In this document: positions 7,301-63,827 of the stretch, one piece after another
Layout of the letters: every line of letters starts with the position of its first letter
How positions within the stretch are numbered: position 1 is the stretch's first letter
Origin: Macrostomum lignano
Lineage: Eukaryota
Assembly (NCBI GenBank): GCA_002269645.1
Contig: NIVC01001263.1
Location: 186,001 to 250,000, forward strand
Direction: 5' to 3'
Length of the DNA stretch: 64,000 bases
Position numbers and translations under genes: made by a program
The notes under the pieces: generated by a model
Databases searched by the model: none
What the model was told of the DNA's origin: nothing
The model's input: only the letters and a program-made list of their open reading frames with translations

Positions 7301-7937
7301 CAATTGTCAGTTCGTTGGCAGCGCCGAGGTCGCCGCCGCTCCCAGCTGCGGGCAGCCGCCGCACGCCTGCCAGGTGTGCGACAAGCGCTTTGGCACCGCC
7401 AGCGGCCTCAAGCAGCACATGCACATCCACGCCACGCACAAGCCCTACCAGTGCGACGCGTGCAAGAAGAGCTACACTCAGTTCTCCAACCTCTGCCGGC
7501 ACAAGCGGATGCAGCCAGCCTGCCGCCAGAAGGTCGCCTGCCCTGCCTGCGACCAGCGCTTCTCCACCGCGCACTCGCTTGAACGGCACAGGCGGGCCTG
7601 TCACAGCCCCGGCCCCGAGTGCCCACAGCAGCAGCCGCCGCTGCCGCTGCACTCGCAGCCATCGCGGCTTCTCTCGTTGCCGCCGCCGCCTCCGCTCCTG
7701 CCGCTGCCCCCGCCGTGCTCGCTGGCTTCGTTCTTCCCGGCCGCGTTGGTTCCGCAGCAACCGCAGCTGCAGCCGCCGCCGGTGCCCTGGCCGCAGCTGT
7801 TTCGGCAGCAGAACCAGCTGATGCAGCAGCAGCACCGCTTCGGTGCCAGCAGCGGCGCATGCAGCGGACCGGCCTTCCTGCCGCCTCCGCCGCCACCGCC
7901 GCCTCTGCCGGCCCAGTTTCAGCAGCCCCCGCATCTT

Positions 7938-7993
<56 letters not shown>

Positions 7994-44127: not shown

Positions 44128-47100
44128 GAACAGCTTTGAATCCATAGCCATCAACACGTTGTAAAAATAGGAAATAATCGTTAATTGCTTTGAATTAAAA
44201 CTAGCATATTCGATTGTCGCTACTCATAGTAGAATAGCAGTAGTAAATTAAAACAAAATTAAACACTGAAAGTCATAATATGCTCTCGGGAGAGTGAATA
44301 TATATGTGCACTTGTGGCAGGATGCCAGTCTCGGTTGGAGTCGGGGCTGCTCGGCTCTAAAAGAATTCAAGCCAGTCAATAGAAGCCAAAGCAGTATGCT
44401 GCTAGCATTAAGCCCAGGTTGAGCTGGCTTGAATCGATTATCATATCGGCAAAGCAGGGCACTGATGAGCTGCCGCATGCCCGGATCAGATTGCACAGCC
44501 GCAAGCTGAAACCAGCCAGCCATTCAATCGGCTGGGGAGACTGGGCAAAGCGGGGCCCGAATGCATTTAAACTTTGGCACTGCTCCCTCTCTCTCCCCCT
44601 GCCTTGCTCTCGTCCCCGCGTCCCCGACCGGCTATCTGTGCCATCAGCATAACTTGCCTAATTGATCTCCATCCCCCTATGCCGCAGAATGCCACAAAGT
44701 GCCACAGACCCCATCGATGGTCTTCGATATTCTCCTTAACTACACGGCTTCCTGCTGTGCCCCCCTTTTTCCCTTTTAATCCCCTCTCCTCGGGCCTAAG
44801 GCCTCTACAGCGCTTGCTGCTCCCCTTCTCCTCCTCATCCCTTCCTCCTTCCCCCTGGGGAACCCCGGCAGATTGGTCGGCGCAGCTTCTCCTCCCTTCA
44901 GCGATGGAGAGAAGGCTGGGACGATAGACTTGGAGTCGCTTTCACTCGCTATCTTTCAGCTCCATTGAGCTCGGTGTTTGCGTCTGAGCAACTCGGCTGA
45001 GGTGCAGCGCTACCTCTCTCCGAACCCGAGGAGAAAAAATGAAAAATGAAAGAAACTGTCGAGGCGACAAAAGGAAAGAAAAATTCTGGCTTAGTAAATC
45101 TCGGGGCGAATTTTTCGCTTTCCCTGCTAAGCCTGTTGAGCACATGCCAGAGTTCCCACCCGGAACAGCTCCCAGAGCAGCTCAGGCAGCAAGCTCCCCA
45201 TTCCCGTCTCGGCCTGTGAGGCACGATTTTTAAACACGAAGGCTCTTCTTCTCCAGTTTCAAGAACCCCCGAACAACCGGGAAGAATCGGTGCGAACTGC
45301 CGGCCGTGAGACTGCCCTGATCTGACTGCTCTCCTGCCTGCCAATGATAATTTTTTTCTTTCTAATTTTCTCTGACAATGTCAGCAGACGAGAGACGGCA
45401 TCTCAGCATCCCGCATCGAAGTGCGCACTAGCAGCAGAGCCCTAGTAAAAAATTCAAGAGTAGGGCCAGACTCAGCGATGACAGCTGCATCCGGTTCGAA
45501 ATTCGACGAGAATCCCCCTTTCATTTCTGCAGCTGCATCTTCGCCTCTGACAGAAGACACGCGGTAACGAACTAGAAATTCAGCAGGAAATTTGCATCTC
45601 TTACATGCGGCCGCGTTTTGCCAGAAAGTCTGTCCTGCACATTCACCAATTCGAGTTCAGGCAGCACTTTTGTGACAAAGCGGCCACTTCTATTTGAACA
45701 CCCGGTGGTCAGCAGAGTCCCAGGGAAAACTGGGATTCCCGGAAAGCTTTGCAAAACCGCGCCGGGACACGTGGGCGAAAACGTAATAAACAAAATCAAT
45801 TTAATCCATCAATCAATACACTCATTCCCCTTAAACCCCGCCGCTACTGCCTTACGCTCTCTAACTCTTCCCATGCAGCTCCGCCTGCCCCCCAGTCCCC
45901 AGCCTCCCCCCCCTCGCTCCGCCTGCCGCCATCGAGAGAGAGAGAGAGAGAGGCGGGATTGTAAACAAACTATTATTTATTATTTATGCGGCCCAGACTC
46001 TTCACCATGTGGCTTCTGCGGGTAGGGAAAAACCAGGAATCGTGCGCCTAGATAGAAGGAGACGAAGGGGCGGATCTGGTTACTGTCGAAAATAGTTCGA
46101 CGCCTTCCTCAGATCTCCCCCCGACCTTAGCCTGCGCGCTCGTGGAACATTAGTGCAGACTGTGTGGGCAGCCACTGGGCATCAAATCCTACTACCTAGC
46201 AAATTTCCTGCCTCAGAGTTGAGCTGCATGACGTTGCCCTCGCGTGAGTACAAGGCAAAGCATTGACCAGAAACGTTGCATGCGGATGCTTGAGACACAC
46301 AGGCCGGGCAACCAATAGAGAAGCCTCTCTTTGAGCTCTGACGGCTGTCCTCACCAGGCGCTATGCATAAGGATCGATTTATCCCGTTTTTCCCACCCCT
46401 CGGGCAGCACGGGAGCAGCGCAGAAGTTGGACAATTTGTGCACAGCCAACAAAAAAGAAGCCGGTTTCGCCGCGCATCTCGCATCGATTCGGTCGCCGCT
46501 ACAGCACGATTGCAGAGAGCCACGCCCACTGCGCTGCTCCCATCTGATGCGCAAAAAAATTTACGTATCTGCGACTGTCACTGACTGGCCCTGTTAAAGT
46601 GGCTGCCGACTTAGCAGTCAGCAAGACGCTGCGAGAACATGGGAGATTTCCACGCAGGGTTTGCGGACGGATTGGATTCCAGAGCAGCGACCCGAATCCT
46701 GCATTCGATAATCCCCCCGACCCCCGACGGATCGCGGCAGATAAGGCGCGTGTAGACTGAACAGCAGAGAACCCTGGCCGGCTGGGAAAAAGTGCGAGTG
46801 GGCGAGCGAGAGAGAGGGAGAAAGGGAAAATGGTAAAACGGAAGCAAATAAAAAAGGCTGGAAGGATTCGCCATCGCATCGGTAGCCCGAAAGAATAGCG
46901 AAAATAAAATCTAGGAGATAAAAATTGATGAAGCGGGAAGTCCCATGACCAGGGGTAAAAAAATATTTGATGGGCTAATCTCTGAGGACAAAAATACTGC
47001 TGAGTGAAGCGATTTTTATCTAAACAACTGCCATAATCCCGGTACACTTGCCTCGTTCGCCCGCCCGGCCACTGCAGGCGTACTGAACACTCGGCCAGCT

Positions 47101-48051
47101 GTGGCAGAGAGCTGGGGCTCCCCTAGCTGGTGGTGTCAGCGAGAGTGAAAGCAATTGCCTTTGAACGGACGTGGGCCAAATCGGGTAGAGAGGTTAAGCG
47201 AGAGACTCGGGCCTATGGAGCCGCGTCAGTCAGGATCTTCGTGTCAGCCGATTTGGCCTGCAGGCCCGGGAGCCGAGGGGAAGAGGGAGGACAAACGAGA
47301 GAGATAAGCCTGCGGGACCGGATCGGGTTTAATAGACTGCTAGATGGCGCCGCCACAGGCAGCAAAGAACCCTTGGACAAGCTCTGGTCCCCCATTCTCC
47401 CCCTACCCGCTCCCGCTCCTCCTGCTGTTCTTCTTCAGCTTCAACAAGAGACCCGCTGGGATGAAGAACTTAAAGAGAGGACACGCGAGTGGCGGCAAGA
47501 AGGGGCGGTTTGCGGCTACCGCAGCTACATATTTACGCACATATCTACGTCGTTAGAGATCCCGCCTGTCCCATCGGAGAATGGGGAAATCTAATGGAGC
47601 TGCTGCTGCAGTGCAGTTGACACGTGGAAAAATAGAAGAGCGAAGGAAGCTACTGAGGTTGAAGACGAAAGTAGGAGAAGAGAGAGGAAGAAATTCTATA
47701 CGGACAAGAAGGAAAGTAAAGGAGAGAGAGGTTAAAAAGAGAAAGGAAGAATTATGAGGGAGACCATGGCTCAACCGTGCAGCCAATGGAGTTTCCTCGG
47801 CGCTCTACTAACCACCCCAGCCAGAGCAGCGCGGAGATGAATGTACGGCTTGCCTAACTGGCCTATATTTTGCGGCCCTGCCTCACGCAATTCAGCTACT
47901 CTTCCTTTCAACCTGCTTCTGCAGCGCCGGTCTTGTATCGTTAGAGGACGCGTAAAAGGGAGAGGGACAGGTTTGCAGAAAAAAACACGGGTAGGGGTGA
48001 CGGAGATTCACCCTAACGGCGGCGCCCCGGCAAAACAATGAGATCAGCGCA

Positions 48052-49755
48052 ATGACGACTACAGTGCACCGGGAAGACATTGCTTACGACATCGGCCCCT
48101 GCCTGGGCAAGGGTGGATTCGGCGTCTGCTACAAGGCGATTGAGAGACCGCCCGGTGACAGCGCTGAGAGGGTAGTGGCAGTGAAGAAGATCAGCTTGCG
48201 CATGATCCAGCAGGCCTCAAAAGAGCCCTACCTGCAGTACGAGGTCGACATCCACAGTCGGCTAAGGCATCGCAACGTGGTCGAATTGTACGCCAACTTT
48301 GTTTACGACGACTTCATATACTTTGTGCTGGAATACTGCAACAAAAAGTCTCTGGCTGATATGATTGTCCACCTAACCTGCCTGTCGTTAGACCTGGCTG
48401 CCTACTATTTCACCCAGTTAATTACCGGCCTGCGTTACCTGCACAGTTGCAACATCCTACACCGCGATCTCAAACTAAGCAACATCCTGGTAGACGTAAA
48501 TGATGTTATAAAGATTACAGACTTCGGCTTGTCATGCACAGTTACTAGAAGCTATCTGGAGCGGCACTTGGCCTGTGGCACGCCCAACTACCTCAGCCCA
48601 GAGGTGCTACTGCGTCAAGGTCACACAACCAAGAGCGACATCTGGTCCTGTGGCGTGGTGCTATACACACTGTTTGGCGGACTGCCACCGTTCCAGATGG
48701 ACGAGCTTGCCGATATTTACCGGTGCATCGTGACAGGTAGCTACGAGTTCACTCGACACCACACAGACGAACATCTGCGGGACCTGGTGGCTCGAATGTT
48801 GCACCTAGACCCGGAGGAGCGGCCGGAACTTGACGAGATTGAGCGGCACCAGTTCTGCAGCTACAGCCAGCAGTATGAGAGTCGGCTGATCAGCGATGCC
48901 AAGGACTCAGTCGGCTGTGTGCACCTGAGATATGCAGCGAGCACCCGATTATTTCCAAAGAGTCTCACATGCGTTTTAAACGGTAAGGGAAAAACGGTAG
49001 CGACTGATGCAACGGTCAGCAACAGTAACGGCAGGAAACGGTTCAAAATTGACTCGGTTGCTTCCACCAGTGCCACCACTGTGATCGACCTCCGTCTAGC
49101 AAGGATATCGGCCTTGCTGCGCTATTTTCGGACGGCACCAGCGTGGGGCAAGCTGGCGACTGACTTTGGCCAATCTTGGCTCACCTGGTGGCGCGACAAG
49201 ACCTCCACTTGCGGCTTCTACTATCAGCTGTCTGATGGCTACAACTGTGTCTTGTATAATGACGCAACCAGCTTCCTTCAGAACACGGGCACTGGCCAGG
49301 CTTACTATGTCAGCGGACAGGTCTGCACCGAAGACAATTCAGCCAAACGGTCCACCGAGATGCCAGTGGAGCTGACGCGGACTTCGAGTGGTTCAGTCAG
49401 CAGATTCTACGAGCCTCTGGCCCAGGACTTGACCGAGGAGCTCCAGGATGTGCCCAGCAGCAACCTGATGCGGGAGCAGGTCAGCTGGGTGAGCCAAGGC
49501 ACCGGAACTGTACACTACCTGCGCAGCTGGTCAAAGCACTGCGGTGGTACCTATCATGTCTTTCACCTGTCAGACGAATCAGTGCAGGTAAACTTCGCCG
49601 GCTCCTATCTGCTGCGGGTGTGCGGCAGTCTGTGCTACTTCTACCAGCCAGCTAGAAAAGGCTTCGTATTCGAGACTAAATCGGTCGAGGACTGGTGCTC
49701 GCAGGATGTCAACGGCGAACTTGTTGACGTGCTCTGCAGCATCTTCCTTGATTAA
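48052..49755 (+). CDS. PLK: Divergent Polo-like kinase (kinase domain plus two polo boxes), intronless, 567 aa
   Basis: GKGGFGVC, VAVK, EVDIH, HRDLKLSN, DFG, CGTPNYLSPE, DIWSCG. PB1 WLTWWRDKTSTCGFYYQLSDG..VLYND; PB2 YLRSW..HLSDESVQVNF. AATAAA at 49947. Confidence 0.93.
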   Translation: MTTTVHREDIAYDIGPCLGKGGFGVCYKAIERPPGDSAERVVAVKKISLRMIQQASKEPYLQYEVDIHSRLRHRNVVELYANFVYDDFIYFVLEYCNKKSLADMIVHLTCLSLDLAAYYFTQLITGLRYLHSCNILHRDLKLSNILVDVNDVIKITDFGLSCTVTRSYLERHLACGTPNYLSPEVLLRQGHTTKSDIWSCGVVLYTLFGGLPPFQMDELADIYRCIVTGSYEFTRHHTDEHLRDLVARMLHLDPEERPELDEIERHQFCSYSQQYESRLISDAKDSVGCVHLRYAASTRLFPKSLTCVLNGKGKTVATDATVSNSNGRKRFKIDSVASTSATTVIDLRLARISALLRYFRTAPAWGKLATDFGQSWLTWWRDKTSTCGFYYQLSDGYNCVLYNDATSFLQNTGTGQAYYVSGQVCTEDNSAKRSTEMPVELTRTSSGSVSRFYEPLAQDLTEELQDVPSSNLMREQVSWVSQGTGTVHYLRSWSKHCGGTYHVFHLSDESVQVNFAGSYLLRVCGSLCYFYQPARKGFVFETKSVEDWCSQDVNGELVDVLCSIFLD

Positions 49756-51920
49756 TCAGTCAACACTAACTGGATAGAAATTGAATGTACCAAGGTGCAG
49801 CCAAACGGACTAACCGCGTTGCAAAGCCAGAGTTTGATCAAATAGAAGCACTGGGACAGCCTGGCTTATTAGCGCATATTCACTGTATTTGACTGGACAC
49901 TCTAATCTGACTAATGCTCCATCAGCTTTCCATGTACAAATATTGAAATAAACAAAGTGCGCTGCATTTTGCGTCAAATTGTGTTTCAAGTCGACTCTCT
50001 CTCTCTCTCTCTCTCTCACGCCTTTCAGCTTAGTTCCAAAAACGCATTAGCTCATTGATTTTTAACCTAGCACTCAATCATTGTTACACGTGCTAATGCA
50101 TACATTTCTACTGGCCGAGGTGTTAAGCCTGCTAGCCTAAGCTGCTCCTGCTCTGCGGGGCGCAGCTGCTCACCCTGCAGCCAGCTCTGGTCAACAATTC
50201 CAGGGCATCTCCTGCCCCCCTTCATTTCTCTCCGTATCCGCCCGTGCAATGGCGGCTTGGCTTTCCCCCCAAAAGGTGAGAATAAACTGTACAGCTCTGA
50301 AGTGGGACTCCTTATTTGCATCCCCGTCTCAGCCCACTCCGACGCCGCCGCCGCCCTGCTCTGCCTCTTGGTAAACCCCAACGGTCAAAGCTGTGGATCT
50401 GCAGGCGTAGAGAAAAGCACGGACACGAGAGCGTATGGCTCATCAATTTCAGGTGGATGCAGCCTGGGTAATGCAGTAAAAAGCGCGCACTACATTAGTC
50501 CTGACTTGGCTCTCATCCAAAGCCAAGGTACAGTACAAGTTGTAAAACTCTATTAGCACGTCGAAACTAGATTTTAAAAAAACTTTGTGACAAATCAATA
50601 TATAATTATTGCAGAAAAAATAGTTAACTAAATGAATTATAATTATTTAGTAAGAAAACCAGGCATAAAACCAGCATGACTTGCTACTAACAGTAGTAAG
50701 AGAGGAATTCTTGAAATGTTAAATCAAAATGAAAGTTTTAATTTTCTAAGAAGAAACAACTGAGAAAGCATATAGAGTAGGAAAACTAGGAGAAAAAGTT
50801 TTATTATTAGTGTGTTTAAACCCAGATTGACAAATATAAGTCCAAAAGTCCAAACAAAAGTCCATGGTTATAGGAAAGTCTACAAAACATTTGAACCTTT
50901 TGATCTTCAACAATAGATAAATAAATTATATCACCTTTTAACATGTGATCTAAATAATAAACCAGAAAATTGATAGCACATTCCTATTCAAAATCAACAA
51001 TAAAAACTGATATATTCATTGGTATATACAGCACAAAAAGGGAATGAAACAGTCAATGTAGAACCATTATGATCTAGCTAGCTACCTAAAGTCTTTTCTT
51101 TTTTGTACTTAGCAGAAAAATTATTTTTTAGAAGATTATGAATATATTACTTTTGCACTAGAAGGTGGTAAATAATAGCAATACCAACAGCTGGACAATT
51201 TTACTTTATATAGGCTTAGCCTATATTAGACTGCAGTGGAGTATTGACTCAAGACTTTATTGATAATAGGACTAAGAAATCTCATTGAAGATAAAAAAGA
51301 CAAATTAACAAACTGAAGGTAAAATATAAAGTGTAGTGTAATTGAAATGGTGTAAAATAAATTATCAATCTAACTATTTAACTAATAGATACTATCTAAC
51401 TGTTATATATAAAAACTTAAAATTACCAGAAAAAAAACTTTTTTATTTGTTGATTAAACAGTACTGTCAGGGATACAATGGAAAGCTGTGCAACTCTACA
51501 ATCTTAAAAAATTGGTTAGATTTTATTTAGTAACTAAATTTCTCAAAATACGTATTTACAATAGAATTATTAAATAGGCACAATATATAATCATCTATGG
51601 ATGAATTTTATCCTGCTTTTTTTCACTAACGAGGCTAGAAGACCGAGTTTAGTTTACTTTAAGGAGTTCTGATCGATTTCATGGAAAACAAAGAAGTCAA
51701 ATATGCGCTGGTTTTATTTTCAAAAAGTGCATTTCAGTCGTCGATTTAACATCCTTCCTTGCTCAAGAATAATCGCAAAAATGAATTTTGGGTTGCATTC
51801 TTGCTTCCCTGCCTAACCATTTAAAGTTGTAGACAGGATTTTTCTATTTCAATTCGCAATCACAACCTCCTGGATCGTACTGAGATACAGAATAAACCGA
51901 TACAAAGCCCATAGGGATAG

Positions 51921-51968
51921 CGACGTTTGCCTGCGGGACGTTTGCTAGCCGACGTTTGCCAGCCAACA
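51921..51968 (-). repeat. Short inverted copy of the 14-bp GGCAAACGTCGGCT array
   Basis: CGACGTTTGCC units are reverse-complementary to the 52801..53052 array. Confidence 0.75.
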
Positions 51969-52800
51969 TTAAGTCAGTGAGAGAAAAATTTGATACTGAA
52001 ATATTCGCAGTTTAGCGGGTTGAAAAAGTTTTTTTTAGTCCAAATTTTTGACGGTTGTTCGCATGTATAAAAGTTCGAAAACAAAATCTATACAAATTAT
52101 GCAGTTCATCAATCTAACATCCAGTTTAACAACAATTTCTTTGAATGTGAAAATATTATAAAGTTTACTTCTGACAGTTTTGTATCGCTTTTCCCAGTTT
52201 GAGATGTTTGATTTTTGATTTGCAAATGAAGACACGCAAATTTAAACGGGAATCTCCAGCGAGCGAAGTTTTGAGCCAATAAAAGAACTGCTGAACGATA
52301 ATTCTGGCTTATATATTTCCCAGTTCATTGGGAGATCCAAAAGCGAATTAATTCCAATGCAGCTTGTCAAGTGCACGCTGTCATGGCCAAACTCCGTTAA
52401 GCAGAGTTTGGCTTTTGAGTTAAGTATATATAGGCGAGACTAGGCCAATACCATTATGGATGTCTCAGTCTTTTCCCATTTAGCTTGTAAACACTTAGCT
52501 TGTTTGGCCACTGAGATGGAAAGGGCCATTCCATGGCATACATAGACACCAACTGTGTCTATGTAACGGTGTAAAGGATGTAACGATGGAAACTCCTATT
52601 TTGTATTTTTACCTTCCTATTTAGGCAGACAAGAGCAATAACTTCAATAAGCCTGAACAGTAGTTTGTTAGTAACCTGTATATTTAATAGCAGTAGCACG
52701 GAGCGAGTTGGAATTAGATTAGTGCTGTGTCCACAGTTTTCAAATGCAAGTACATGTAAGCCTAGAGAGGGCAGACTTCTTTAACCAATTGCCGCCTGCA

Positions 52801-53052
52801 AATGTCCGGCTGGCAAACGTCGGCTGGCAAACGTCGGCTGGCAAAAGTCTCGCAGGCAAACGTCGGCTGGCAAATGTCGGCTGGCAAACGTCCCGCAGGC
52901 AAACGTCGGCTGGCAAATGTCCCGCTGGCCAACGTCGGCTGGCAAACGTCGGCTGGCAAAAGTCTCGCAGGCAAACGTCGGATGGCAAACGTCGGCTGGC
53001 AAACGTCGGCTGGCAAACGTCGGCTGGCAAACGTCGGCTGGCAAACGTCGGT
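52801..53052 (+). repeat. 14-bp minisatellite (GGCAAACGTCGGCT)
   Basis: About 17 units with variants. Confidence 0.92.
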
Positions 53053-55419
53053 TGAGACTGTCACTGAAGTTTTCAAAGCCAATCAAAGATATGATAGTGC
53101 CAACACAGACCTCTTAATTATAGTGACGATTACAGTAGCAACCTTTGAAAACTACACTTCAAGTATATCTAACCAGGTTTTAATGAGTGGAAAATTAAAA
53201 GTACAATTGCAAAATGTTACTTGACATGTACATGTAACACACGGTCACAACTGTTAAAGTTATAAAATATCTTATAATGATTCAGATTGATAATGTATGC
53301 TAATAGGAGCTCATCATTTATCATGTATGCGCCATTAGTTCAGTCTTGTAGCTCATATTAATTAAATCAACTGAGCTTCGCCAGGTTTTCATTGGCCCAC
53401 TGAAGATGGCATTCATTGGCAGATGAAGTCAAATCCGAAATCGGCCGTTCCTGTCGCACTGCAGGGCAAATGTCTCTGCTGCACGAAGCTGATGTGGCCC
53501 AAGGCTTGCCAATTTGCTGCCTGGCTAAGCTTTGGGGCCAGTTGAAGGAGTTCACACTGACGCAGTGGCAGGCCAGCCCCTCAGCCAGGCTCTGGTACCG
53601 GTACGTCGAGAACTCCACTGTGCTCAGCAGGCCGATCAGGTCGAGAGACCACGCAAATTTTGTGCCGGCGGCCTTTCGTTAAAGCATCGAGTAGCACTTT
53701 TGTTGTGCTACAGGCCGGATCGCGACTCTGATTATCTCATTGAACGAGCCGAAGATGGCGTCAATCAACTGGCCGGACTGACTTCGGACTCTGCGGGGGA
53801 TCGCATCAGGAGACTTAATCAGCCCGTCCCTATTGCACGGATTAATTCCCGCCAGTCTCTCATGCAGATAAGAAAGACACGCGACTCACTCTGTTTCTTC
53901 GGGTAACCGCGTGGCGGCAGCAGGGGTGGCTTCTGTCAATTTCTGGCGAACGTTTAAGCACAGCCTGACTTCTGAGTAAATTCAGTTTAGTAAGTTTAGC
54001 GTTGTAATTGCGTCTTGCACAACTCAACCAAGCCGATGCCTCCCTTATTGCCGCTCCTGCATATATTTATATTCGCGCTAGCTGGTTAAGGCCTGGGCCC
54101 AGGCCCAGCTAGCCAAAATGATGAGTCTATAAAAGTCTTACAAGGTCGTACAAAGCCGGGGTCGCGATTGGAGGAGAAAAACACAAACCGATTGGCTGGA
54201 CCGCCAGCCAATCGCAGGGCAAGGGAGGGGCGCACCGGGGCCGCAGCCAGCCAAAACCGGCTGGCCCATACAGACAGCGGGGGTGGGTGCAGCTGGGGGG
54301 GGGGTTGGCGCAGACAGAATGGGGGGGTTGGCGCAGGCAGAATGGGGGGGTTGGCGCAGGCATGCGGCCGGGAGGGGTGGGAGTGCAGTGCCGGACACAC
54401 TTGACCGAGAGCCAGAGATTGCTCATCGGTGCAAGTGCACCCGGGCACAACACTTTCTTGGCCACAATTGCTGAAATCGAACCTGCATGGTGGATTCCTC
54501 TCGAAATTCTTTGAAGCTTTCTTCAGAATTGCTATTGGTCACGACTCACGGTTGGGATATAGAATAGAATATAGAATATGTCCTAGGTGTAGAACATTAC
54601 GCCGGACGGTAGCTTGTATTCCAGGCTGTAAATCAGGTCAGTTTAACACAATGGCTGCATCGGTTTTATCATGGTTGATAGATTTACCTAAGCTGAGCTA
54701 TTTCATAGATTAGGAACCATGCGGCCAACAGATTTCATGGCGTTGTGACGATGTCGTTATGTTATAATATTTTTAGTTTTTATCCGTTTTTTTATTGTAC
54801 CTAAATTGATTTTTATGGGGTTAGGGATATGGGGTTAGGGGGAAAGCGTTTCTTATGTTTAGTTCTAGGAAAATTCTGTATATTATTTTATCTACTGTTC
54901 TATTATTTTGGTTACCACTTTTTTCAGTAAGGATTGGAGGTTTTAGTGGGTCAGTTTTGGCGCGGTTTTGAGTGCGGGTGTTTCGTGTTTTTTTGGTGTA
55001 GGCGCAAGTCCTCTCCCTTCTCGCGCTCGGCGTGCCTCGTAATCGTGTTCCGGTGCTAGCTACAGGCTTTAGAGCCAACCCAAACCGATTTAGACCTTTA
55101 ATTTTCAATTATCCAGCAGTTTGGTCACCAGACTAGACAGTTTTGACTTAACTTAATTATGGGCATTAAAATTAGACATTAGTAACTTAACTGCCGCCAA
55201 AATTGTACTCTAATAATTTTATAGTTGATATTATAGCCTCAGGAGAATCTATTATGCTCCTATTGATATTAATGTGCTACAAATCAAATAAATAACCTGG
55301 AATAATTTACTTATAAATAATCAGAGTGGATATTACCCTTGAATTAATTTAATAGCTAAATTGATTCATTATTATTTATTTTATTTGAGCTGAACTGAGT
55401 GCTCTGCGACAGCGTACAT

Positions 55420-55456
55420 CAGAGGTCATCAAACATTTTTCCTCAAGGGCCAGATG
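55420..55456 (+). mobile_element. hAT/Charlie-like transposon terminal remnant
   Basis: CAGAGGTCATCAAACATTTTTCCTCAAGGGCCAGATG resembles the recalled Charlie/MER58-type end (CAGGGGTCGGCAAACTTTTT..AAGGGCCAGAT). No partner end was found. Confidence 0.5.
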
Positions 55457-55733
55457 CCTAAGCTCATGCCTAATCTAGAAAAATAACCTGTAAGAGCGTA
55501 CGGTTGCATTTCTAATAAATTAGAGTGCGTACACAAGAGAGCTAAAAAAATCACACTGTTTATTAATGAATTTCATCTACATCTGTTTCGATTGCAATGA
55601 ATAGATCTAATTTCGCGTGGATAATTATATAGTTACAGACTATTGATATTCTATGAGAATTTTAAAAACCAAAAGAATAAGTCTAAAATTTATAAAACAG
55701 AAAGCTTACTGACGAAGCTCGACATTCAAGCGC

Positions 55734-57146
55734 TCAGCGGCGCAGGCTCCTCTCCGACACGGACACGAAGACGCCGCCGCACCTCGCGGACCGGCCGCTG
55801 TTCCACGCGTAGCTCGCCGCCTTGGCCAGCCGGGGCCGAGGGTTCGCCGGAGCAGCGCCGGCCACCCTGGCGAACACCCGCATGCCCTGGCAGAGCACCC
55901 GCTCCAGCTGGGCCTGGACAGCCGGCCAGCCGGCCAGGAGGCTCTTCACGCTGACGACCGACAGTTCGCGGCGGCGTCGGCCGCTGCCGGTCGAGAGGAC
56001 GCGGCCGAACAGCGGGAAGCGCCGGGCGCCGGGGCGCGGCTGCACGGCGAGCTCCACAGCGTGCTGGCCGCTACGGCCGCCGCAGAGCAGCGACCGACGC
56101 ACCGAGCCGCTGCCAAACGGTTGCCATGACAACCGAGACACGCTGCCCGGCTGCCCGACCAAACGCTACGGGGACCAGGTGAGAGCGGCCAGCGCGGCGG
56201 GCAGGTGCCTGTCAAGGCAGGTCTCTCGGCGAACTCTGACCGACCTGGCAGCCCGCGCCCGCGGAGTCTTCGCAGCTGACTTGCTGGCGGCGGGCTTCTT
56301 CAGCACCCTGCCAGATGAGGCAGCAGCCGATTTGGTCGCCTCGGCAGCTTTTGGTAGCCGTGCAGCAGCAGTCTTTGTTCTTGAAGTCGTCGTTGTTGCT
56401 GTTGTCTTTGTTGAACCGGCAGCGTCGCTGGTGGCCACGGTGGCGGCTGACGAGCGGCGCACGAGGCCCAGCATGGCGCTCACGTCACCGGGCAGCGCTG
56501 CGCCATCCCTGGCGCGCACCTCGCGCTCGTAGCCGTCGCGAAGGACGTCGGTACCGCCCTCCCGGTAGGCGATGGCCATGAGGAAGTCGCGAACGCCGCG
56601 GAACTCGGCCAGGGGGAGCCGCAGGCCGCCGGTCACCTTAGCGACGTGGTCCATAAAGCTCTGCGAGTTCCTGCTGCTGCCGCACTGCACACAGTACACG
56701 GTGACTCCCAGCTGGTGCAGCAGCTCGGTCTCCGCCTTCCAGTCGATCTTGTACTTGTTCCTGGCGCTGCCAACTCCATGCGGGAAGGCGTCGCCAACCA
56801 GCACCAGAGCGCGGCTGCTGTGCGGGCGCCAGCTGAGGCGGGTGCGGGCCTGCTGCAGCACCAGCTCGTAGCACTCTGGCTCGTCCCTGCCGTACGTGTC
56901 CTTCACAGTCTTGGCGAACCGCACCAGGTCCGCTGTGGAGGTGCCGAAGTCGCGGATCTCCGTCTCGTATCTGTCCCCGTAGTCTCCGTGAGCGATGAGG
57001 GCCACGCTCAGGTCCGGGATGTCGGTAGTGAGCCGCTGCAGCATCTCGGCGATGTTGCTGCGCACCTCGTTAATGACGGAGCACATTGAGCCGGTCGTGT
57101 CGAAAGAGAAGGCCAAGTCCAGCGGCTGGAGACCGGTGAGAGCCAT
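55734..57146 (-). CDS. vWA-domain protein with basic linker and C-terminal ET/GIY-YIG-like region, interrupted by a single in-frame TAG (56168..56166)
   Basis: MIDAS-type start DLAFSFDTTGSM, plus GDY, G.D.PECYE and LVLVGDAFPH. Track ORFs 56166..57146 and 55734..56162 are in the same frame, separated only by TAG-CGT. TATATAA at about 57245 and AATAAA at 55564..55559 bracket the whole 471-codon unit. Confidence 0.8.
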
Positions 57147-57238
57147 GGCTTTCCAGTGAAGATTGATTAGCCTGCAGTTTCAGTGTTGGCTTGCTCTGCC
57201 TGAGCTGTTGGTCTGAACAGAGCCCGGCCTGTCCCGGT

Positions 57239-57245
57239 TATATAG
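57239..57245 (-). promoter_or_regulatory. Candidate TATA box of the vWA gene
   Basis: TATATAA on the minus strand about 95 nt upstream of the ATG at 57146. Confidence 0.45.
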
Positions 57246-57599
57246 ACTGGAGCGGCTCGGCTCCCGCGTGTGGCGACACGCTGTCACAAAATTCTCGCCA
57301 TAATCGCTCTTCCCTACTGCTTTCATGGGCAGAGTTTGTACGCCCAATAAGTACAGTGGGGTCAGAGAGGTTTCTACGAGCGTTGCTAAAAATAGCGCGG
57401 GGCAATCATGGCTTATGGCACGCACGCTGGGGAACGCATGCGGCCGCACGCTCTCCCAGCTGCATATCTGACTTTGTCTTCGGTCCAGATTGTTACCTGA
57501 CAGGGGCGCTGAAGTTCTGGCGTAGCGTAAGGGAGTGCGTTTAGGTGTTTCTTTAACTTCGATCCTATTTTTCACCATGATTAAATTCTCACTCAAGGA

Positions 57600-58100
57600 G
57601 AATCACTCTGATGACCCAAATGGCTCACGGAGAATCACTCAGATGACCCAAATGGCTCACGGAGAATCACTCAGATGACCCAAATGGCTCACGGAGAATC
57701 ACTCAGATGACCCAAATGGCTCACGGAGAATCACTCAGATGACCCAAATGGCTCACGGAGAATCACTCAGATGACCCAAATGGCTCACGGAGAATCACTC
57801 AGATGACCCAAATGGCTCACGGAGAATCACTCAGATGACCCAAATGGCTCACGGAGAATCACTCAGATGACCCAAATGGCTCACGGAGAATCACTCAGAT
57901 GACCCAAATGGCTCACGGAGAATCACTCAGATGACCCAAATGGCTCACGGAGAATCACTCAGATGACCCAAATGGCTCACGGAGAATCACTCAGATGACC
58001 CAAATGGCTCACGGAGAATCACTCAGATGACCCAAATGGCTCACGGAGAATCACTCAGATGACCCAAATGGCTCACGGAGAATCACTCTGATGACCCAAA
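57600..58100. repeat. 32-bp minisatellite (GAATCACTCAGATGACCCAAATGGCTCACGGA)
   Basis: About 15.5 essentially identical head-to-tail units, with no spacers. Confidence 0.97.
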
Positions 58101-58624
58101 CGGCTGATTACTCGTAGATGACGGCGTAATAGAGTCAAGGACCACTTTAGTATAGCAGCAGGACGTAAAACCCGTAGATCGTGTAATTTTTTGAAGGCCA
58201 ATCTCCTGAAAAAAATACACTGCGGAGATAGGTAAAATTCATACTCAGCAAGAGTCGAAAGTTCCACCTGTACAAATCACGCGTTATAGTAAGACTTTGT
58301 GGTGAAGAACTCTGAGTTTTACGCAATGTACATTTAAACCCTATTCGCGATGAATGGACAGTGAGGCGGTCCTGTATGTACTTTTAATTCAGAGCCTGGC
58401 CGGGGCCTGCAAGTGCCTGCGCCGCACTCCACACCATTGAAGTAGCAAAGCGATATAGTATAAAGAGAAGAAAGGCACTCTGTCCCTGTCCACAGGAAGC
58501 CCTGCATTCACTGCACAATTTAAACCTGCCTAATCATCTTGTTAGTTTAGTTGTCTATCACTGATATACCAGGTATCTATACGAGTTTGTTAATGGTAAG
58601 ACTGCACTGCAGATTTTATAGTGT

Positions 58625-58760
58625 CCTTTAGTCACCTGAATGATCCCCCTTGAGATTCCTCAGTCACCTGAGCGATTCCCATTGAGAGTCCTTAGCTACC
58701 TGAGCGATTCCCCTTGAGAGTCCTTAGTTACCTGAACGATTCCCCTTGAGAGTCCTTAGT
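58625..58760. repeat. 30-bp minisatellite (CCTTAGT[C/T]ACCTGAGCGATTCCCCTTGAGAGT-like)
   Basis: About 4.5 units. Confidence 0.85.
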
Positions 58761-59012
58761 CACCAGAGCGGTTTCTCCTTGAGAGTTCTGAGATTGCATA
58801 CTAAGAGCATACATATACTGTAACTTTTGTTAAGTGAACCATCATGAAACTTTACCCATTGACTTTTTAAAATCTTATTTTCAAATTGCAAATAACCTAC
58901 TGATAATAGTAGAGTGCAAAGGGTAAGACTCATAAATCCTAAACGGCGCCTAAAAATGAAGCCCAAAATCACCAAAAGAGAAAACTGCCGCCCCCCCGAA
59001 CACGCAGAACTC

Positions 59013-61172
59013 ATGGAGCAGCAGCCGCACCCCATCTCGCCAAAGATCGACAGTACGGGCGCCTGGTCCTACTTCCCCGGTGTCACCGTGATCTGCCCGC
59101 TGCCAGCCGAGTCCCGGCGTCGCCTCGAATCAGCAGCGGAGCGGGCGCTGGCCGCGCAACCGACGCTGTCACGGTACTTCGCCCCGCTGCCGGCTGCTAG
59201 CTATCACGTGACCATCGCCGGGGTGACCAAAAGAGGCCGAACTGCAACCCGAAGCGACTGGCTGGGGACGGTTCGAGCCAAGACTGCCGCAGGCTGGCCT
59301 GAGCTGGCTGACAACCTGAGGCGGATGCAGCTGAAGCCCGCGGTGGTCTTCAAGAGATTCTTCTCGCCCAATGCCAGCATTGTGGGCTTTGATGTGGCCT
59401 TGGCGGATGAGTCGCAGAATCAGCTGATAGAAGAGGCTCGACGGCTCGTGTGCGAGGGGTGAGTGACGCGGATGAGGAAGAGGCTGAAAGGACTGAGCGG
59501 GTGTCTATCACCAGTTGGGACCGATCTTTGCGGGTGTCTTTCACCTGTTGGGACTGATCTTTGCGGGTGTCTTTCACCTGTTGGGACTGATCTTTGCGGG
59601 TGTCTTTCACCTGTTGGGAGTGATCTTTGCGGGTGTCTTTCACCTGTTGGGAGTGATCTTTGCGGGTGTCTTTCACCTGTTGGGACTGATCTTTGCGGGT
59701 GTCTTTCACCAGTTGGGACTGATCTAAGCTGGTGTCTTTCACCTGTTGGGACTGATCTAAGCTGGTGTCTTTCACCTGTTGGGAATGATCTAAGCTGGTG
59801 TCTTTCACCTGTTGGGACTGATCTTTGCGGGTGTCTTTCACCTGTTGGGACTGATCTTTGCGGGTGTCTTTCACCTGTTGGGACTGATCTAAGCTGGTGT
59901 CCATCACCAGTTGGGACTGATCTAAGCTGGTGTCTTTCACCTGTTGGGACTGATCTTTGCGGGTGTCTTTTACCTGTTGGGACTGATCTCTGCGGGTGTC
60001 TTTCACCTGTTGGGACTGATCTAAGCTGGTGTCTTTCACCTGTTGGGACTGATCTAAGCTGGTGTCTTTCACCTGTTGGGACTGATCTAAGCTGGTGTCC
60101 ATCACCAGTTGGGACTGATCTAAGCTGGTGTCTTTCACCTGTTGGGACTGATCTAAGCTGGTGTCTTTCACCTGTTGGGACTGATCTAAGCTGGTGTCTT
60201 TCACCTGTTGGGACTGATCTTTGCGGGTGTCTTTCACCTGTTGGGACTGATCTAAGCTGGTGTCCATCACCTGTTGGGACTGATCTTTTCGGGTGTCTTT
60301 CACCTGTTGGGACTGATCTTTGCGGGTGTCTTTCACCTGTTGGGACTGATCTAAGCTGGTGTCTTTCACCTGTTGGGACTGATCTAAGCTGGTGTCCATC
60401 ACCAGTTGGGACTGATCTTTGCGTGGTGTCTTTCACCTGTTGGGACTGATCTTTGCGGGTGTCTTTCACCTGTTGGGACTGATCTAAGCTGGTGTCTTTC
60501 ACCTGTTGGGACTGATCTAAGCTGGTGTCTTTCACCTGTTGGGACTGATCTTTGCGGGTGTCTTTCACCTGTTGGGACTGATCTTTGCGGGTGTCCTTCA
60601 CCTGTTAGGACTGATCTTTGCGGGTGTCTTTCACCTGTTGGGACTGATCTTTGCGGGTGTCTTTCACCTGTTGGGACTGATCTTTGCGGGTGTCTTCCAC
60701 CGGGACTGGCTGATCTAAGCTGGTCTTCCACCGGGACTGGCTGATCTAAGCTGGTCTTCCACCGGGACTGGCTGATCTAAGCTGGTCTTCCACCGGGACT
60801 GGCTGATCAAAGCGGGTGCCTTCCACTGGGACTGGCTGATATAGGCATTAAAATAACAAGTTCAGAAGGCAACCGCATGACTTCAACTGCAGAGGCAAGC
60901 TGCCACAGTACCAGGCGCTGCACTGCACCCTTGGCTACCAGTACCAGCGCATCCCCGCGGCCGAGGAGCAGGTTGTCAAGTCGGAGCTGGCCGCGGTGCA
61001 GGCGAGCGTTCGCCAGGCCCTGTTGGCTGAGCCGCCGGTCATGCAGCTGGAGGCGGCCCGGCTCTGCTGGTACCGCGGCATGGTGCAGTTCATCGAGTGG
61101 GACGGCCGCTCCGTGCCCGAGGAGCTGGTCGCTGACCGGGAGGTTGGCAGCAGCCTTGCGAACTACATGTAA
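59013..61172 (+). CDS. 2H phosphoesterase, DUF1868-like; two exons (59013..59458, 60893..61172)
   Basis: Exon 1: YFPGVTVICPL...LPAASYHVTIAG (first HxT). The phase-2 GT-AG intron GG|GTGAGT...CTGCAG|A restores the frame. Exon 2 (not in the ORF track in this frame): GKLPQYQALHCTLGYQY (second HxT)...RLCWYRGMVQF...ANYM*. The start could instead be the ATG at 58956. Confidence 0.88.
59500..60835. repeat. 33-bp intronic minisatellite (TTTCACCTGTTGGGACTGATCT[AAGCT/TTGCG]GGTGTC)
   Basis: About 38 units of two main variants, filling the 2H gene intron. Confidence 0.96.
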
Positions 61173-61181
61173 TGCGATCTA

Positions 61182-62697
61182 GTTTGATCCCCGATTTGAT
61201 CCAATGTGATCCCAATTTGATCCAATGTGATCCCAAAATTTGATCAAATGTGATCGCAATTTGATCCAATGTGATCCCAAAATTTGATCCAATGTGATCG
61301 CAATTTGATCCAATGCGATCCCCAATTTGATCCTAATTAGATCCAATGTGATCCCATTTCGATCCAATGTGATCCTAATTTGATCCAATGTGATCCCAAT
61401 TTGATCTAATGCGATCCCCAATTTGATCCTAATTAGATCCAATGTGATCCCATTTCGATCCAATGTGATCCCAATTTGATCCAATGTGATCCCAATTTGA
61501 TCCAATGTGATCCCAATTTGATCCAATGCGATCCCCAATTTGATCCCAATTAGATCCAATGCGATCCCAATTTGATCCAATGCGATCCCAATTTGATCCA
61601 ATGTGATCCCAATTTGATCCAATGTGATCCTAATTTGATCCAATGTGATCCCAATTCGATTCAATTCTGTACCCAATATGATCCAATGTGATCCCAATTT
61701 GATCAAATGTGATTCTAACTCGATTCAATTGGGTACCCAATTTGATCCCCAATTTGATCCGATGCGATCCCCAATTTGATCCAATTTGATCCAATGTGAT
61801 CCCAATTCGATTCAATTGGGTACCCAATTTGATCCAATGTGATCCCAATTTGATCCAATGTGATCCAATTGGATCCCAATTTGATCCAATGTGATCCCAA
61901 TTTGATCCAATGTGATCCCAAAATTTGATCCAATGTGATCGCAATTTGATCCAATGCGATCCCCAATTTGATCCCAATTAGATCCAATGTGATCCCAATT
62001 TGATCCAATGTGATCCCAATTTGATCCAATGTGATCCCAATTTGATCCAATGTGATCCCAATTCGATTCAATTCGGTACCCAATATGATCCAATGTGATC
62101 CCAATTTGATCAAATGTGATTCTAACTCGATTCAACTGGGTACCCAATTTGATCCCCAATTTGATCCAATGCGATCCCCAATTTGATCCAATTTGATCCT
62201 ATGTGATCCCAATTTGATCCAATGTGATCCCAAATTGATCCAATGCGATCCCAATTTGATCCAATGTGATCCCAATTTGATCCAATGTGATCCCAATTTG
62301 ATCCAATGTGATCCCAATTCGATTCAATTCTGTACCCAATATGATCCAATGTGATCCCAATTTGATCAAATGTGATTCTAACTCGATTCAATTGGGTACC
62401 CAATTTGATCCCCAATTTGATCCCAATTTGATCCGACGCGATCCCCAATTTGATCCAATTTGATCCAATGTGATCCCAATTCGATTCAATTGGGTACCCA
62501 ATTTGATCCAATGTGATCCCAATTCGATCCAATGTGATCCCAATTTGATCCAATGCGATCCCAATTTGATCCCAAAATTTGATCCAATGTGATCCCAATT
62601 TGATCCGATGTGATCCCGATTTGATCCAATGTGATCCCAATTTGATCCAATGTGATCCCAATTTGATCTAATGTGATCCCCAATTTGATCCAATGCG
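61182..62697. repeat. 21-bp-based minisatellite (TTTGATCCAATGTGATCCCAA) with higher-order variants
   Basis: Begins about 10 nt after the 2H stop codon; about 70 units. Confidence 0.95.
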
Positions 62698-63827
62698 ATA
62701 TGCAATCAATATGATTCAACATGTATTCATAACCAAACGCAATCGATTGCGACCCCAGCAACCCCATACTGTATTCGCAGTAGGGGAAAAATGACAATAA
62801 AAGCGACAAAAGCAGAAACCAATCAGAGCGGCTTGTGTTGCATACAATATGCTAGTCGCACAAACATGTTTAACAAGATAAATGGTTCAGCACTGAAAGC
62901 GTATCTATTTATAAAGTTGTCAGTCAATAAATCTTCCAACTAATGGATTACTGATTGCACTCCCAAAGACAAAAAACAGTTTTTATATGCAGAGTTGAAA
63001 TTCCGCAGGCCAGCGCCAGGTTTAGAGCCATAAAATGTAGGGGCAATGATTTGTCAGCATTGGGGGTCATGCGAGCCTGTGCGGCTACTATAAGTAGCCG
63101 GACGAGGGTCAAGTAGATGGGCTGAGTTTGCACACTGGAATGAAGCTCGGAGCGGAGAAAATCTATTATATATTTTAGTAGATTGTGCGGATTACACTAC
63201 TAACAGTAGCAAGGTGCAAATAAAAATCAAAGTGCACGATTTGTTAATTAACTTCAGCGCGCAACCCAGCACAGAATTTACAGGTAGATAATACAGGATG
63301 AAGTGTAACACAGGCTGCATTCGCTTCATTTAATCAAGACAGTTAAAAATCTGTTCAGCTGTAACAGAGAACCAACCAATCCCGCACAATTTCGTTTAAT
63401 CAACGCAGAACTCCGCCACTATCAAGAGAGATTGCTTCTGTGTAGACTGGGCCCGCTGATTGACAGCTGGGGACAATATATACGGGAAAAAGTACAAATT
63501 CGATTGTCACAAAAAATTTCCAGTTTGGGACCGAGCTTTCGAAAAAAAGCGCCAAGAAAGTAAAATATTTTTTGCTACTAACCGCAGTAGTACGAAATGA
63601 ACAGTGCGAAATTAGATAATGTTATATAAAGGAATTATATAGAAGGTTACAGAACAATAATAAAATTTTTGCATTTTTTCCAACAAATACAACAAATTCG
63701 ACATGGCCGGAAGCGGGCAACAATTTTTGCATCGATAACTCCTCTCGTAATACCGCTGCTGACGCTGCGGGAACAAAAATATGAAAGCAATGATGCCTTG
63801 ACGCTTGGCCTGCATTTTGGTGGATTA

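What the first reader, a model, noticed from the sequence alone, without database searches (positions are those of the whole stretch)
55734..56200. Single amber stop at an inferred conserved Trp splits the vWA gene: readthrough, A-to-I 'amber/W' editing, or a fresh null allele
Seen: the frame reads LTWSP-TAG-RLVGQ and then stays open for about 143 more codons with the same GC-rich composition. The only AATAAA lies beyond the second stop, and no splice sites or frameshifts are evident around the TAG. Inference: the stop falls where a W.x.x.W motif is expected (WSP*RL vs W..WKL in ET-like domains), so the ancestral codon was probably TGG. Established: UAG is the preferred ADAR triplet and UAG-to-UIG is decoded as Trp (hepatitis delta amber/W site); UAG followed by C is a leaky stop context. 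This could therefore be a switch between a vWA-only form and a vWA plus C-terminal-domain form. I could not identify a supporting hairpin by eye.
Basis: partly seen in the sequence, partly recalled or inferred. Interest (0 to 1): 0.7.

Follow-up and report, generated by a model that had tools for sequence, protein, structure and literature searches.

The report
Young nonsense mutation in duplicated flatworm gene
One of several near-identical copies of a flatworm (Macrostomum lignano) vWA-domain gene carries a recent TGG-to-TAG change at an invariant tryptophan; this is most likely an ordinary early gene-decay event in a recently polyploid genome, not a recoding switch.

Summary
On the minus strand, a 326-codon vWA ORF (57146-56169) ends at TAG (56168-56166), and the frame stays open for 143 more codons to TGA (55736-55734). 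The window is Macrostomum lignano assembly Mlig_3_7. A collinear sister locus on another contig (flanks 97-99.7 % identical) encodes an intact 470-aa protein, exactly the read-through length, with TGG at that codon. Two older paralogues, a transcript from a more distant relative and about 40 homologues from other phyla also have Trp there. This assembly is known to hold three homeologous subgenomes about 2 % apart, so an intact back-up copy exists. Nothing supports a recoding switch. The stop is unique to this copy. The 3' context has only a +4 C. UAG read-through would insert Gln/Tyr/Lys, not Trp. No duplex beyond chance covers the site (fold z = -0.73). The stop lies 23 codons into a conserved, uncharacterised C-terminal domain related to Pfam PF19239; it is neither ET-like nor WGR. 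Too few substitutions have accumulated to prove relaxed selection. Reads and RNA-seq could not be checked. Verdict: a fresh nonsense allele or nascent pseudogene; ordinary.

The parts
57592..58105 (.). Tandem array of 16 copies of a 32-bp unit, about 450 bp upstream of the ATG. The sister locus has only about 2 units.
   Evidence: Tandem Repeats Finder; the 5' alignment and the blastn.
57238..57244 (-). TATA box (TATATAA), about 95 nt upstream of the ATG. The roughly 200 nt of promoter around it are identical in the intact sister, and the core is conserved even in the older paralogues.
   Evidence: Sequence; alignments.
56169..57146 (-). Upstream reading frame, 326 codons. It holds the vWA domain (Pfam match aa 10-162, fold to about aa 230), a low-complexity Ala/Thr/Lys linker (about aa 233-300) and the first 23 residues of the C-terminal domain (RRE...LTWSP).
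56166..56168 (-). Premature amber codon TAG (codon 327). The derived base is the A at 56167 (T on the plus strand). Every other copy has TGG (Trp).
   Evidence: The Trp is invariant in A1 (W320 of P0002) and in A4 (W38).
55737..56165 (-). Remainder of the conserved C-terminal domain, 143 codons, still open. It is 98 % identical to the intact sister. It carries the window-specific replacements R407W (55926-55928) and R411Q (55914-55916) at Arg residues conserved in all other Macrostomum copies.
55734..55736 (-). Ancestral stop codon TGA of the full-length 470-codon gene.
   Evidence: homology among the paralogues ends just after it.
55559..55564 (-). First AATAAA poly(A) signal, 170 nt after the ancestral stop. 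It is conserved in the sister locus.

Best explanation
The TAG is a real and evolutionarily very recent G-to-A nonsense mutation (W327*) in one homeologous copy of an intronless vWA + C-terminal-domain gene of the neopolyploid flatworm Macrostomum lignano. The mutation cuts the protein 23 residues into its conserved C-terminal domain. It leaves a vWA-plus-linker product of 326 aa. Because the gene has no introns, this product would not be removed by exon-junction-dependent nonsense-mediated decay (an inference). The lesion is tolerated because an intact homeolog (P0121, 470 aa) and an older intact paralogue (the L001 ORF) supply the full-length protein. This is the first step of duplicate-gene decay, or possibly a truncation to a vWA-only form. 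It is not a regulated recoding site. Shown: the stop, its derived state, its uniqueness to this copy, the intact collinear sister, and purifying selection on the lost domain across the family. Inferred: that the base call is correct, that termination is efficient, and that redundancy explains the tolerance.
For: (1) The window is Mlig_3_7 contig NIVC01001263.1. The sister locus L005 on NIVC01000235.1 has the same neighbours (a 2H-phosphodiesterase-like gene and a 567-aa polo-box kinase) and is collinear over more than 15 kb at 97.4-99.7 % identity. (2) The sister CDS is the same length (1413 nt), differs at 18 positions with no indels, and has TGG at codon 327. L001, L002 and the transcript L004 from a more distant relative also have TGG. 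(3) Mlig_3_7 is documented to contain three homeologous subgenomes, with 1.9 % (L1-L2) and 2.4 % (L-S) SNP divergence in an inbred line (PMC10733133). This matches the divergence seen here. (4) The lost domain is functional elsewhere: omega is 0.28-0.35 among older paralogues and species, residues are invariant across phyla, and there are 230 homologous clusters. (5) Polarised changes on the window lineage are 4 synonymous and 1 replacement in the vWA part, against 1 synonymous, 2 replacements (R407W, R411Q at conserved Arg) and the nonsense change in the C-terminal part. The direction fits decay downstream of the stop. (6) The promoter, 5'UTR and poly(A) signal are essentially identical to those of the intact sister, which fits a very young lesion. 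(7) The older paralogue L002 also carries a lesion (a 1-nt deletion) in the same domain, consistent with ongoing loss among redundant copies.
Against: I had no access to raw reads, other M. lignano assemblies, RNA-seq, ribosome profiling or proteomics, so the base call and the fate of the mRNA are unverified. The counts for relaxed constraint are too small to be significant (my arithmetic on the counts: Fisher one-sided p about 0.29; pairwise C-terminal omega between window and L005 is 0.29). The downstream frame has no second lesion, the regulatory elements are intact, UAG is the best ADAR triplet, and +4 C is the leakiest context. A bypass mechanism is therefore not excluded.
Confidence: 0.8

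Rival explanations
1. Assembly or consensus error: the true base at 56167 gives TGG and the gene is intact. The error could come, for example, from mis-polishing in a genome with three subgenomes about 98 % identical to each other.
For: Mlig_3_7 is a long-read assembly of a polyploid described as error-prone, with 36 % of its length in chimeric scaffolds (PMC10733133). Paralogue L002 shows a 1-nt deletion in a C run, typical of long-read error. No independent contig carrying the 326-aa product was found.
Against: Long-read errors are mostly indels, not substitutions. A G-to-A call needs reads with A, yet every other known copy has G, so cross-mapping cannot create it. The copy carries 17 other private or shared substitutions and no indel relative to its sister, so it is a cleanly resolved distinct haplotype.
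Confidence: 0.07
2. Restorative A-to-I editing (amber/W type). An ADAR converts UAG to UIG, which is read as Trp. This restores the invariant Trp in a fraction of transcripts, so the copy makes both the vWA-only and the full-length forms.
For: UAG is the preferred ADAR triplet, and editing would restore exactly the ancestral residue. Flatworms have ADAR1 and ADAR2, and planarian ADAR2 edits hundreds of mRNA sites (PMC8797187). Restorative editing of premature stops is documented in fungi, with a different enzyme (PMC10776026). The 'harm-permitting' model predicts G-to-A mutations at editable sites (PMC6881472). The downstream frame and regulatory elements are intact.
Against: No structure supports it. 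The 301-nt fold has z = -0.73, and 20 of 100 shuffles fold as well. No inverted-repeat arm covers 56166-56168. In the whole-mRNA ensemble, the best single partner of the A has probability 0.33, within short helices, and the longest uninterrupted helix (12 bp) lies elsewhere. The intact sister has the same surrounding sequence, so there is no sign of a pre-existing editing site. The lesion is private and young. ADAR presence and activity were not shown for M. lignano here.
Confidence: 0.03
3. Functionally relevant translational read-through of UAG-C yields a C-terminally extended isoform.
For: A C at +4 gives the highest basal read-through, and UAG-C is an avoided terminator context (PMC4615788). 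A 143-codon open, recently coding extension follows.
Against: The context UAG-CGUUUG matches none of the known stimulatory motifs (UAG-CAAUYA; UGA-CGG/CUA; UAG-G plus pseudoknot). There is no significant downstream structure. The stop is not conserved in any relative, unlike programmed read-through stops. UAG is decoded by near-cognate tRNAs as Gln, Tyr or Lys, not Trp (PMC4150775), so the product would lack a Trp that is invariant in more than 40 homologues.
Confidence: 0.03
4. The mutation created a 3' splice acceptor (CCGUAG|) after a pyrimidine-rich tract. Spliced-leader trans-splicing there would add the SL's terminal AUG in frame with CGU-UUG-GUC. This would give a separate mRNA for a stand-alone C-terminal domain.
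For: The M. lignano SL ends in ...UUGCAUG and about 30 % of genes are SL trans-spliced (PMC8629364). The junction would be in frame (sequence). Stand-alone versions of this domain exist in other organisms.
Against: The acceptor motif YTNCAG is only partly matched. Being in frame has a 1-in-3 chance. Stand-alone homologues include the W-x-x-W segment that would be lost. The homologous transcript L004 carries no SL. There is no direct evidence at all.
Confidence: 0.01

Closest known systems
Nonsense-mutated homeologs or nascent pseudogenes arising during fractionation of recently duplicated (polyploid) genomes
   Same: There is a single disabling point mutation in one copy. An intact collinear homeolog lies about 1.3 % (CDS) to 2.5 % (flanks) away. 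Regulatory signals are still intact, and selection on the family is otherwise purifying. The host genome is documented as a neopolyploid with three subgenomes (PMC10733133).
   Different: Only the C-terminal domain is cut off. The vWA part remains a complete ORF and shows a 4:1 ratio of synonymous to replacement changes, so a functional truncated protein is not excluded. Relaxed constraint is not yet measurable.
Hepatitis delta virus amber/W site, and fungal restorative editing of premature stops (PMC10776026)
   Same: A UAG sits at a position where UGG (Trp) is needed for the longer product. Editing would give a short/long protein switch.
   Different: The defining duplex around the edited A is absent here. 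No RNA evidence exists. The stop is a private, recent mutation rather than a conserved feature. The fungal system uses a different deaminase and stage-specific expression.
Programmed stop-codon read-through genes of animals (for example UGA-CUAG genes, LDHB/MDH1x)
   Same: A leaky-type +4 C and a long open, protein-like extension.
   Different: The stop is not conserved in paralogues or orthologues. There is no known stimulatory hexanucleotide or structure. The extension is not an add-on but the body of an ancestral domain interrupted at an invariant residue.
Pfam PF19239 ('GIY_YIG_domain', uncharacterised metazoan-type family) fused to vWA (PF00092 / PF25106)
   Same: The domain interrupted by the stop is homologous to a 230-cluster family. 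Of that family, 13 of 30 stand-alone members and the multi-copy protein P0157 match PF19239. The predicted order of secondary-structure elements is beta-beta-alpha-alpha-beta-alpha.
   Different: The window's own piece and its closest paralogues do not reach significance against PF19239. There is no structural match to solved GIY-YIG nucleases. Catalytic residues are not evident. The function is unknown.

Membership tests
von Willebrand factor type A (vWA) domain | Significant match to the family profile | tested here: met
   PF00092 at E 1.7e-5 and 25.6 bits against a gathering cut-off of 23.8, aa 10-162. The sister P0121 gives 25.9 bits.
von Willebrand factor type A (vWA) domain | Rossmann-like alpha/beta fold of vWA/integrin I domains | tested here: met
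   The AF2 model of paralogue P0002 (pLDDT 76-90 over most of residues 10-200, two 10-residue blocks lower) matches VWF A1/A3, integrin I domains and TFIIH p44 with Foldseek probability 1.0 and E about 1e-8. The model is of the paralogue, not the window protein itself; identity is 81 % overall and clearly higher across the vWA domain (alignment).
von Willebrand factor type A (vWA) domain | MIDAS metal-site motif D-x-S-x-S plus downstream Thr and Asp | tested here: inconclusive
   The sequence has D16-T-T-G-S20, a D-x-T-x-S variant, invariant across homologues together with T84, D88 and D119. Metal binding was not tested.
Duplicated-gene pseudogene / null allele | Disabling mutation relative to intact close relatives | tested here: met
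   TGG to TAG at codon 327. TGG is present in L005, L001, L002 and L004.
Duplicated-gene pseudogene / null allele | Redundant intact copy in the same genome | tested here: met
   P0121, 470 aa, at collinear locus L005. L001 holds a continuous 480-aa ORF.
Duplicated-gene pseudogene / null allele | Relaxed selective constraint (dN/dS approaching 1) after the lesion | tested here: inconclusive
   On the window lineage, the C-terminal part has 2 replacements and 1 synonymous change, against 1 and 4 in the vWA part. This is not significant. Pairwise omega is 0.29.
Duplicated-gene pseudogene / null allele | Loss or reduction of expression or of the protein | not testable with these tools
   No RNA-seq or proteome access. 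The promoter and poly(A) signal are intact.
ADAR amber/W recoding site | Target A in a favourable triplet (5' U, 3' G) | tested here: met
   CCG-UAG-CGU.
ADAR amber/W recoding site | Extended double-stranded RNA embedding the edited A (editing-complementary sequence) | tested here: not met
   Fold z = -0.73. No inverted-repeat arm lies over the site. The best partner probability is 0.33 and only short helices form.
ADAR amber/W recoding site | A in DNA and G in cDNA at the site | not testable with these tools
   No read data are available.
Programmed stop-codon read-through | Stop codon conserved among orthologues/paralogues, with a conserved protein-coding extension | tested here: not met
   The stop is unique to this copy.
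Programmed stop-codon read-through | Known stimulatory 3' motif or downstream structure | tested here: not met
   Only the +4 C is present. UAG-CGUUUG differs from UAG-CAAUYA (PMC4615788). There is no significant structure.
WGR domain (PF05406) as the C-terminal module | Profile similarity to the WGR domains of the bacterial vWA homologues | tested here: not met
   hhalign probability 0.1 %. There is no Pfam hit.
Pfam PF19239 'GIY_YIG_domain' | Significant match to the family profile | tested here: inconclusive
   The window piece has no hit. Of 10 close homologues, 2 match at E about 0.012. Homologues found with the domain profile do match: 13 of 30 members, best E 1.2e-6, and P0157 at 1.3e-45 over the same residues.
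Pfam PF19239 'GIY_YIG_domain' | GIY-YIG nuclease fold and catalytic residues | tested here: inconclusive
   The order of secondary-structure elements is compatible, but Foldseek finds no PDB match (best E 0.24). The model has a mean pLDDT of only 62.

The most novel reading that the evidence does not exclude
The private TAG is functionally bypassed, so this copy makes both a vWA-only and a full-length (or separate C-terminal) product. The most attractive route is ADAR-mediated UAG-to-UIG 'restorative' editing that re-creates the invariant Trp. That would be a cellular animal counterpart of the hepatitis delta amber/W switch, caught at its evolutionary origin in a neopolyploid. Less attractive routes are read-through or SL trans-splicing at the newly created AG.
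Probability: 0.05. Interest if true: 0.75.

Novelty: new member of a known kind. Interest (0 to 1): 0.15.

Why it matters
As it stands, the finding matters little. It is a clean, datable example of the first step of duplicate-gene decay in a neopolyploid animal, in which one homeolog is hit by a nonsense mutation while its sister stays intact. It could serve as a marker for subgenome fractionation studies in Macrostomum lignano, and as a caution for annotation: the 326-aa model in the public annotation is a truncated allele of a 470-aa gene. If RNA data showed editing or read-through at this site, it would become a rare natural case of a premature stop rescued at the RNA level in an animal. 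The gene family itself is uncharacterised. It joins a vWA domain to a widespread PF19239-like module, has a patchy animal distribution and has close bacterial vWA relatives. It may deserve study independently of the stop.

Tried and rejected
(1) A search of the 5.8-billion-protein index with the 143-aa downstream piece returned nothing, not even the known paralogues. I treat this as a limitation of the word index on this biased sequence and draw no inference from it.

(2) I tested whether the C-terminal domain is a WGR domain, suggested by the bacterial homologues and an 'FGRV' motif. It is rejected: hhalign probability 0.1 %.

(3) A profile search of PDB sequences and a Foldseek search of the domain model gave no significant match.

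(4) PADLOC and NCBIfam gave no name or defence-system link for the vWA family.

(5) I looked for independent contigs carrying either allele. Only the reference assembly holds them, so the base call has no independent confirmation.

(6) I looked for a second copy inside the window. There is none.

(7) I checked whether the homologous transcript carries a spliced leader. It does not.

(9) I considered an in-frame intron removing the TAG. It is rejected because the sister gene is a continuous 470-codon ORF with identical surrounding sequence, and removal would delete invariant residues.

Full report
**1. The observation.** On the minus strand, an ATG at 57146 opens a 326-codon frame that ends ...LTWSP-TAG at 56168-56166. 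The same frame then continues RLVGQPG... for 143 codons to TGA at 55736-55734. A TATA box (57244-57238) lies about 95 nt upstream of the ATG. The first AATAAA lies at 55564-55559, beyond the second stop, and there is none between the ATG and that point. The N-terminal piece is a vWA domain (PF00092, 25.6 bits against a cut-off of 23.8). The downstream piece has no Pfam match. The open frame after the TAG is not remarkable in itself: the piece is 75 % G+C, and about 15 % of shuffles lack an in-frame stop. Its coding nature is shown by homology and by codon-position GC periodicity (GC3 0.895 against GC2 0.62).

**2. What the locus is.** The 326-aa product is identical to an annotated protein of Macrostomum lignano assembly Mlig_3_7 (GCA_002269645.1, contig NIVC01001263.1). 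The nearest relatives are three other Macrostomum proteins of 463-506 aa. The 90 % cluster of the window protein contains one more member, P0121 (BOX15_Mlig029225g1). It is 470 aa, exactly 326 + 1 + 143.

P0121's locus (L005, contig NIVC01000235.1) has the same neighbours as the window: a 2H-phosphodiesterase-like gene upstream and a 567-aa polo-box kinase downstream. It is collinear with window 45801-59611 at 96-99.7 % identity. The two CDSs are both 1413 nt, have no indels and differ at 18 positions. One of these is codon 327, which is TAG in the window and TGG in L005.

Two older paralogous loci (L001, L002) share only the core promoter and the CDS with the window (dS about 0.15-0.2). Transcript L004, from SRR28338164, comes from a more distant relative (dS about 0.8-1.5). 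All three also have TGG at this codon. The derived change is therefore G to A at window 56167 (coding strand).

A published analysis shows that Mlig_3_7 contains three homeologous subgenomes (S, L1, L2) of an inbred neopolyploid, with SNP divergence of 1.9-2.4 % (PMC10733133). The window/L005 pair fits a homeolog pair.

**3. What the stop interrupts.** An alignment of flatworm, mollusc and other homologues shows a conserved C-terminal domain of about 165 residues. It starts at R-R-E (window aa 306-308) and has invariant W-x-x-W...L, E-x-x-V-Q, F-x-R and Y-A-W positions. The stop replaces the invariant second Trp (W320 of P0002), 23 codons into the domain.

A profile of this domain finds 230 clusters among 1.84 billion representatives. 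It occurs alone (150-200 aa), after vWA domains, or after other N-termini. In a second, independent alignment of 30 stand-alone members the same Trp is again invariant.

Thirteen of those 30 members match Pfam PF19239 ('GIY_YIG_domain'). So does P0157, a protein with seven tandem copies, over the same residues. The window piece itself does not reach significance. The domain is not WGR (hhalign 0.1 %). It has no significant match among PDB sequences or PDB structures (model pTM 0.62). Across older paralogues and species the domain evolves under purifying selection (omega 0.28-0.35; vWA 0.11-0.21), so the stop removes a functional module.

**4. Age and consequences.** I polarised the 18 differences with the outgroups.

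- In the vWA part (codons 1-232), the window lineage has 4 synonymous changes and 1 replacement (A219P). R87/G87 is ambiguous.
- In the C-terminal part, it has 1 synonymous change, 2 replacements (R407W and R411Q, both at Arg residues conserved in all other Macrostomum copies) and the nonsense change.
- The sister lineage has about 3 synonymous changes and 0-1 replacements.

The direction fits relaxed constraint downstream of the stop with continued constraint on the vWA part. The numbers are too small to be significant (my arithmetic: Fisher one-sided p about 0.29). The promoter (200 nt identical), the 5'UTR (1 mismatch) and the poly(A) signal are intact relative to the sister. The lesion is therefore young. 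Whether the 326-aa vWA-only product is used is open. Because the gene is intronless, exon-junction-dependent NMD would not apply (inference from general knowledge).

**5. Tests of the recoding readings.**

Editing: UAG is the favoured ADAR triplet, and flatworms have active ADARs (PMC8797187). However, the 301-nt region around the site folds no better than shuffles (z = -0.73). No inverted-repeat arm covers the site. In a whole-mRNA partition function, the A has no dominant partner (maximum 0.33), and the longest uninterrupted helices (12 bp) lie elsewhere.

Read-through: a +4 C is the leakiest context (PMC4615788). But UAG-CGUUUG matches none of the known stimulatory motifs, and there is no downstream structure. 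The stop is not conserved in any relative. Near-cognate decoding of UAG inserts Gln, Tyr or Lys rather than Trp (PMC4150775), so the product would lack an invariant residue.

Trans-splicing: I raised a further idea myself. The mutation creates CCGUAG| after a pyrimidine-rich tract, and the M. lignano spliced leader ends in AUG (PMC8629364), which would be in frame. The acceptor consensus YTNCAG is only partly met, and the homologous transcript has no SL.

None of these readings has positive evidence. None can be excluded without RNA or ribosome data.

**6. Error versus real.** I could not inspect reads, and no independent contig carries either allele. A substitution error to A is unlikely, because no known copy supplies an A at this site and the copy is otherwise cleanly resolved without indels. 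I give an error about 7 %.

**7. Verdict.** This is a real, recent nonsense mutation (W327*) in one homeolog of a redundant gene in a neopolyploid flatworm (confidence about 0.8). It is an ordinary kind of event. Interest is low (0.15). The uncharacterised vWA + PF19239-like family is the more interesting by-product.

Noticed in passing
L002:4404-4425 (NIVC01000195.1, gene BOX15_Mlig020601g1): The older paralogue has a 1-nt deletion in a C run that shifts the frame in the same C-terminal domain. This explains the aberrant tail of the annotated 506-aa protein P0003. It could be a second decaying copy or a long-read homopolymer error.
   Followed up: partly
L001:3001-4443 and L002:3001-4584: The public gene models P0002 and P0003 splice out part of a (K/T)KPVT repeat linker. 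L001 is in fact one continuous 480-codon ORF, so the predicted 'introns' look like annotation artefacts. The linker repeat number differs strongly between copies.
   Followed up: partly
window 57592-58105: A nearly perfect (99 %) array of 16 copies of a 32-bp unit lies about 450 bp upstream of the gene's ATG. The intact sister locus has only about 2 units. Any effect on expression is unknown.
   Followed up: partly
window 51144-54019 versus L005:13135-16009: This 2.9-kb stretch is 99.7 % identical between the two homeologous loci, whereas the flanks are about 97.5 % identical. It may reflect recent gene conversion or homogenisation between subgenomes.
   Followed up: no
window 55737-56237 (C-terminal domain) and proteins P0122-P0269: The domain cut by the stop belongs to a widespread, uncharacterised module: 230 clusters, stand-alone or fused. 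P0157 has 7 tandem copies behind a transposase-type HTH. The module is linked to Pfam PF19239 'GIY_YIG_domain', and the motifs in P0157 (G-[VI]-[FY]-E..., V-V-Y-[IT]-G-K) resemble GIY/YIG. Its function is unknown.
   Followed up: partly
window 56661-57119 (vWA) and proteins P0008, P0013, P0021, P0038: The nearest non-animal relatives of this vWA domain are bacterial (43-44 % identity) and carry different C-terminal modules (an unnamed roughly 130-aa domain, sometimes plus WGR). Amphioxus P0008 has that 'bacterial' module N-terminal to the vWA domain, and a Nucella protein fuses the vWA domain to nucleoplasmin. The patchy animal distribution (flatworm, molluscs, amphioxus) hints at domain shuffling or horizontal transfer.
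   Followed up: no
window 59497-60701 and 61194-62699: There are large tandem arrays: 36 copies of a 33-bp unit, overlapping long ORFs on both strands at 59350-60601, and a degenerate array with periods of 10, 21 and 42 bp. The sister locus has arrays of related units but different lengths.
   Followed up: no
window 41137-42960 (+): A 607-codon ORF gives a repeat-type hit to FluMu_N (PF17891, E 1.6e-15, with no single stretch significant). This is probably a low-complexity or repeat artefact. Other identifiable genes in the window are a polo-box kinase (48052-49755), a C2H2 zinc-finger protein (7203-8663) and a 2H-phosphodiesterase-like gene (58914-59462).
   Followed up: no
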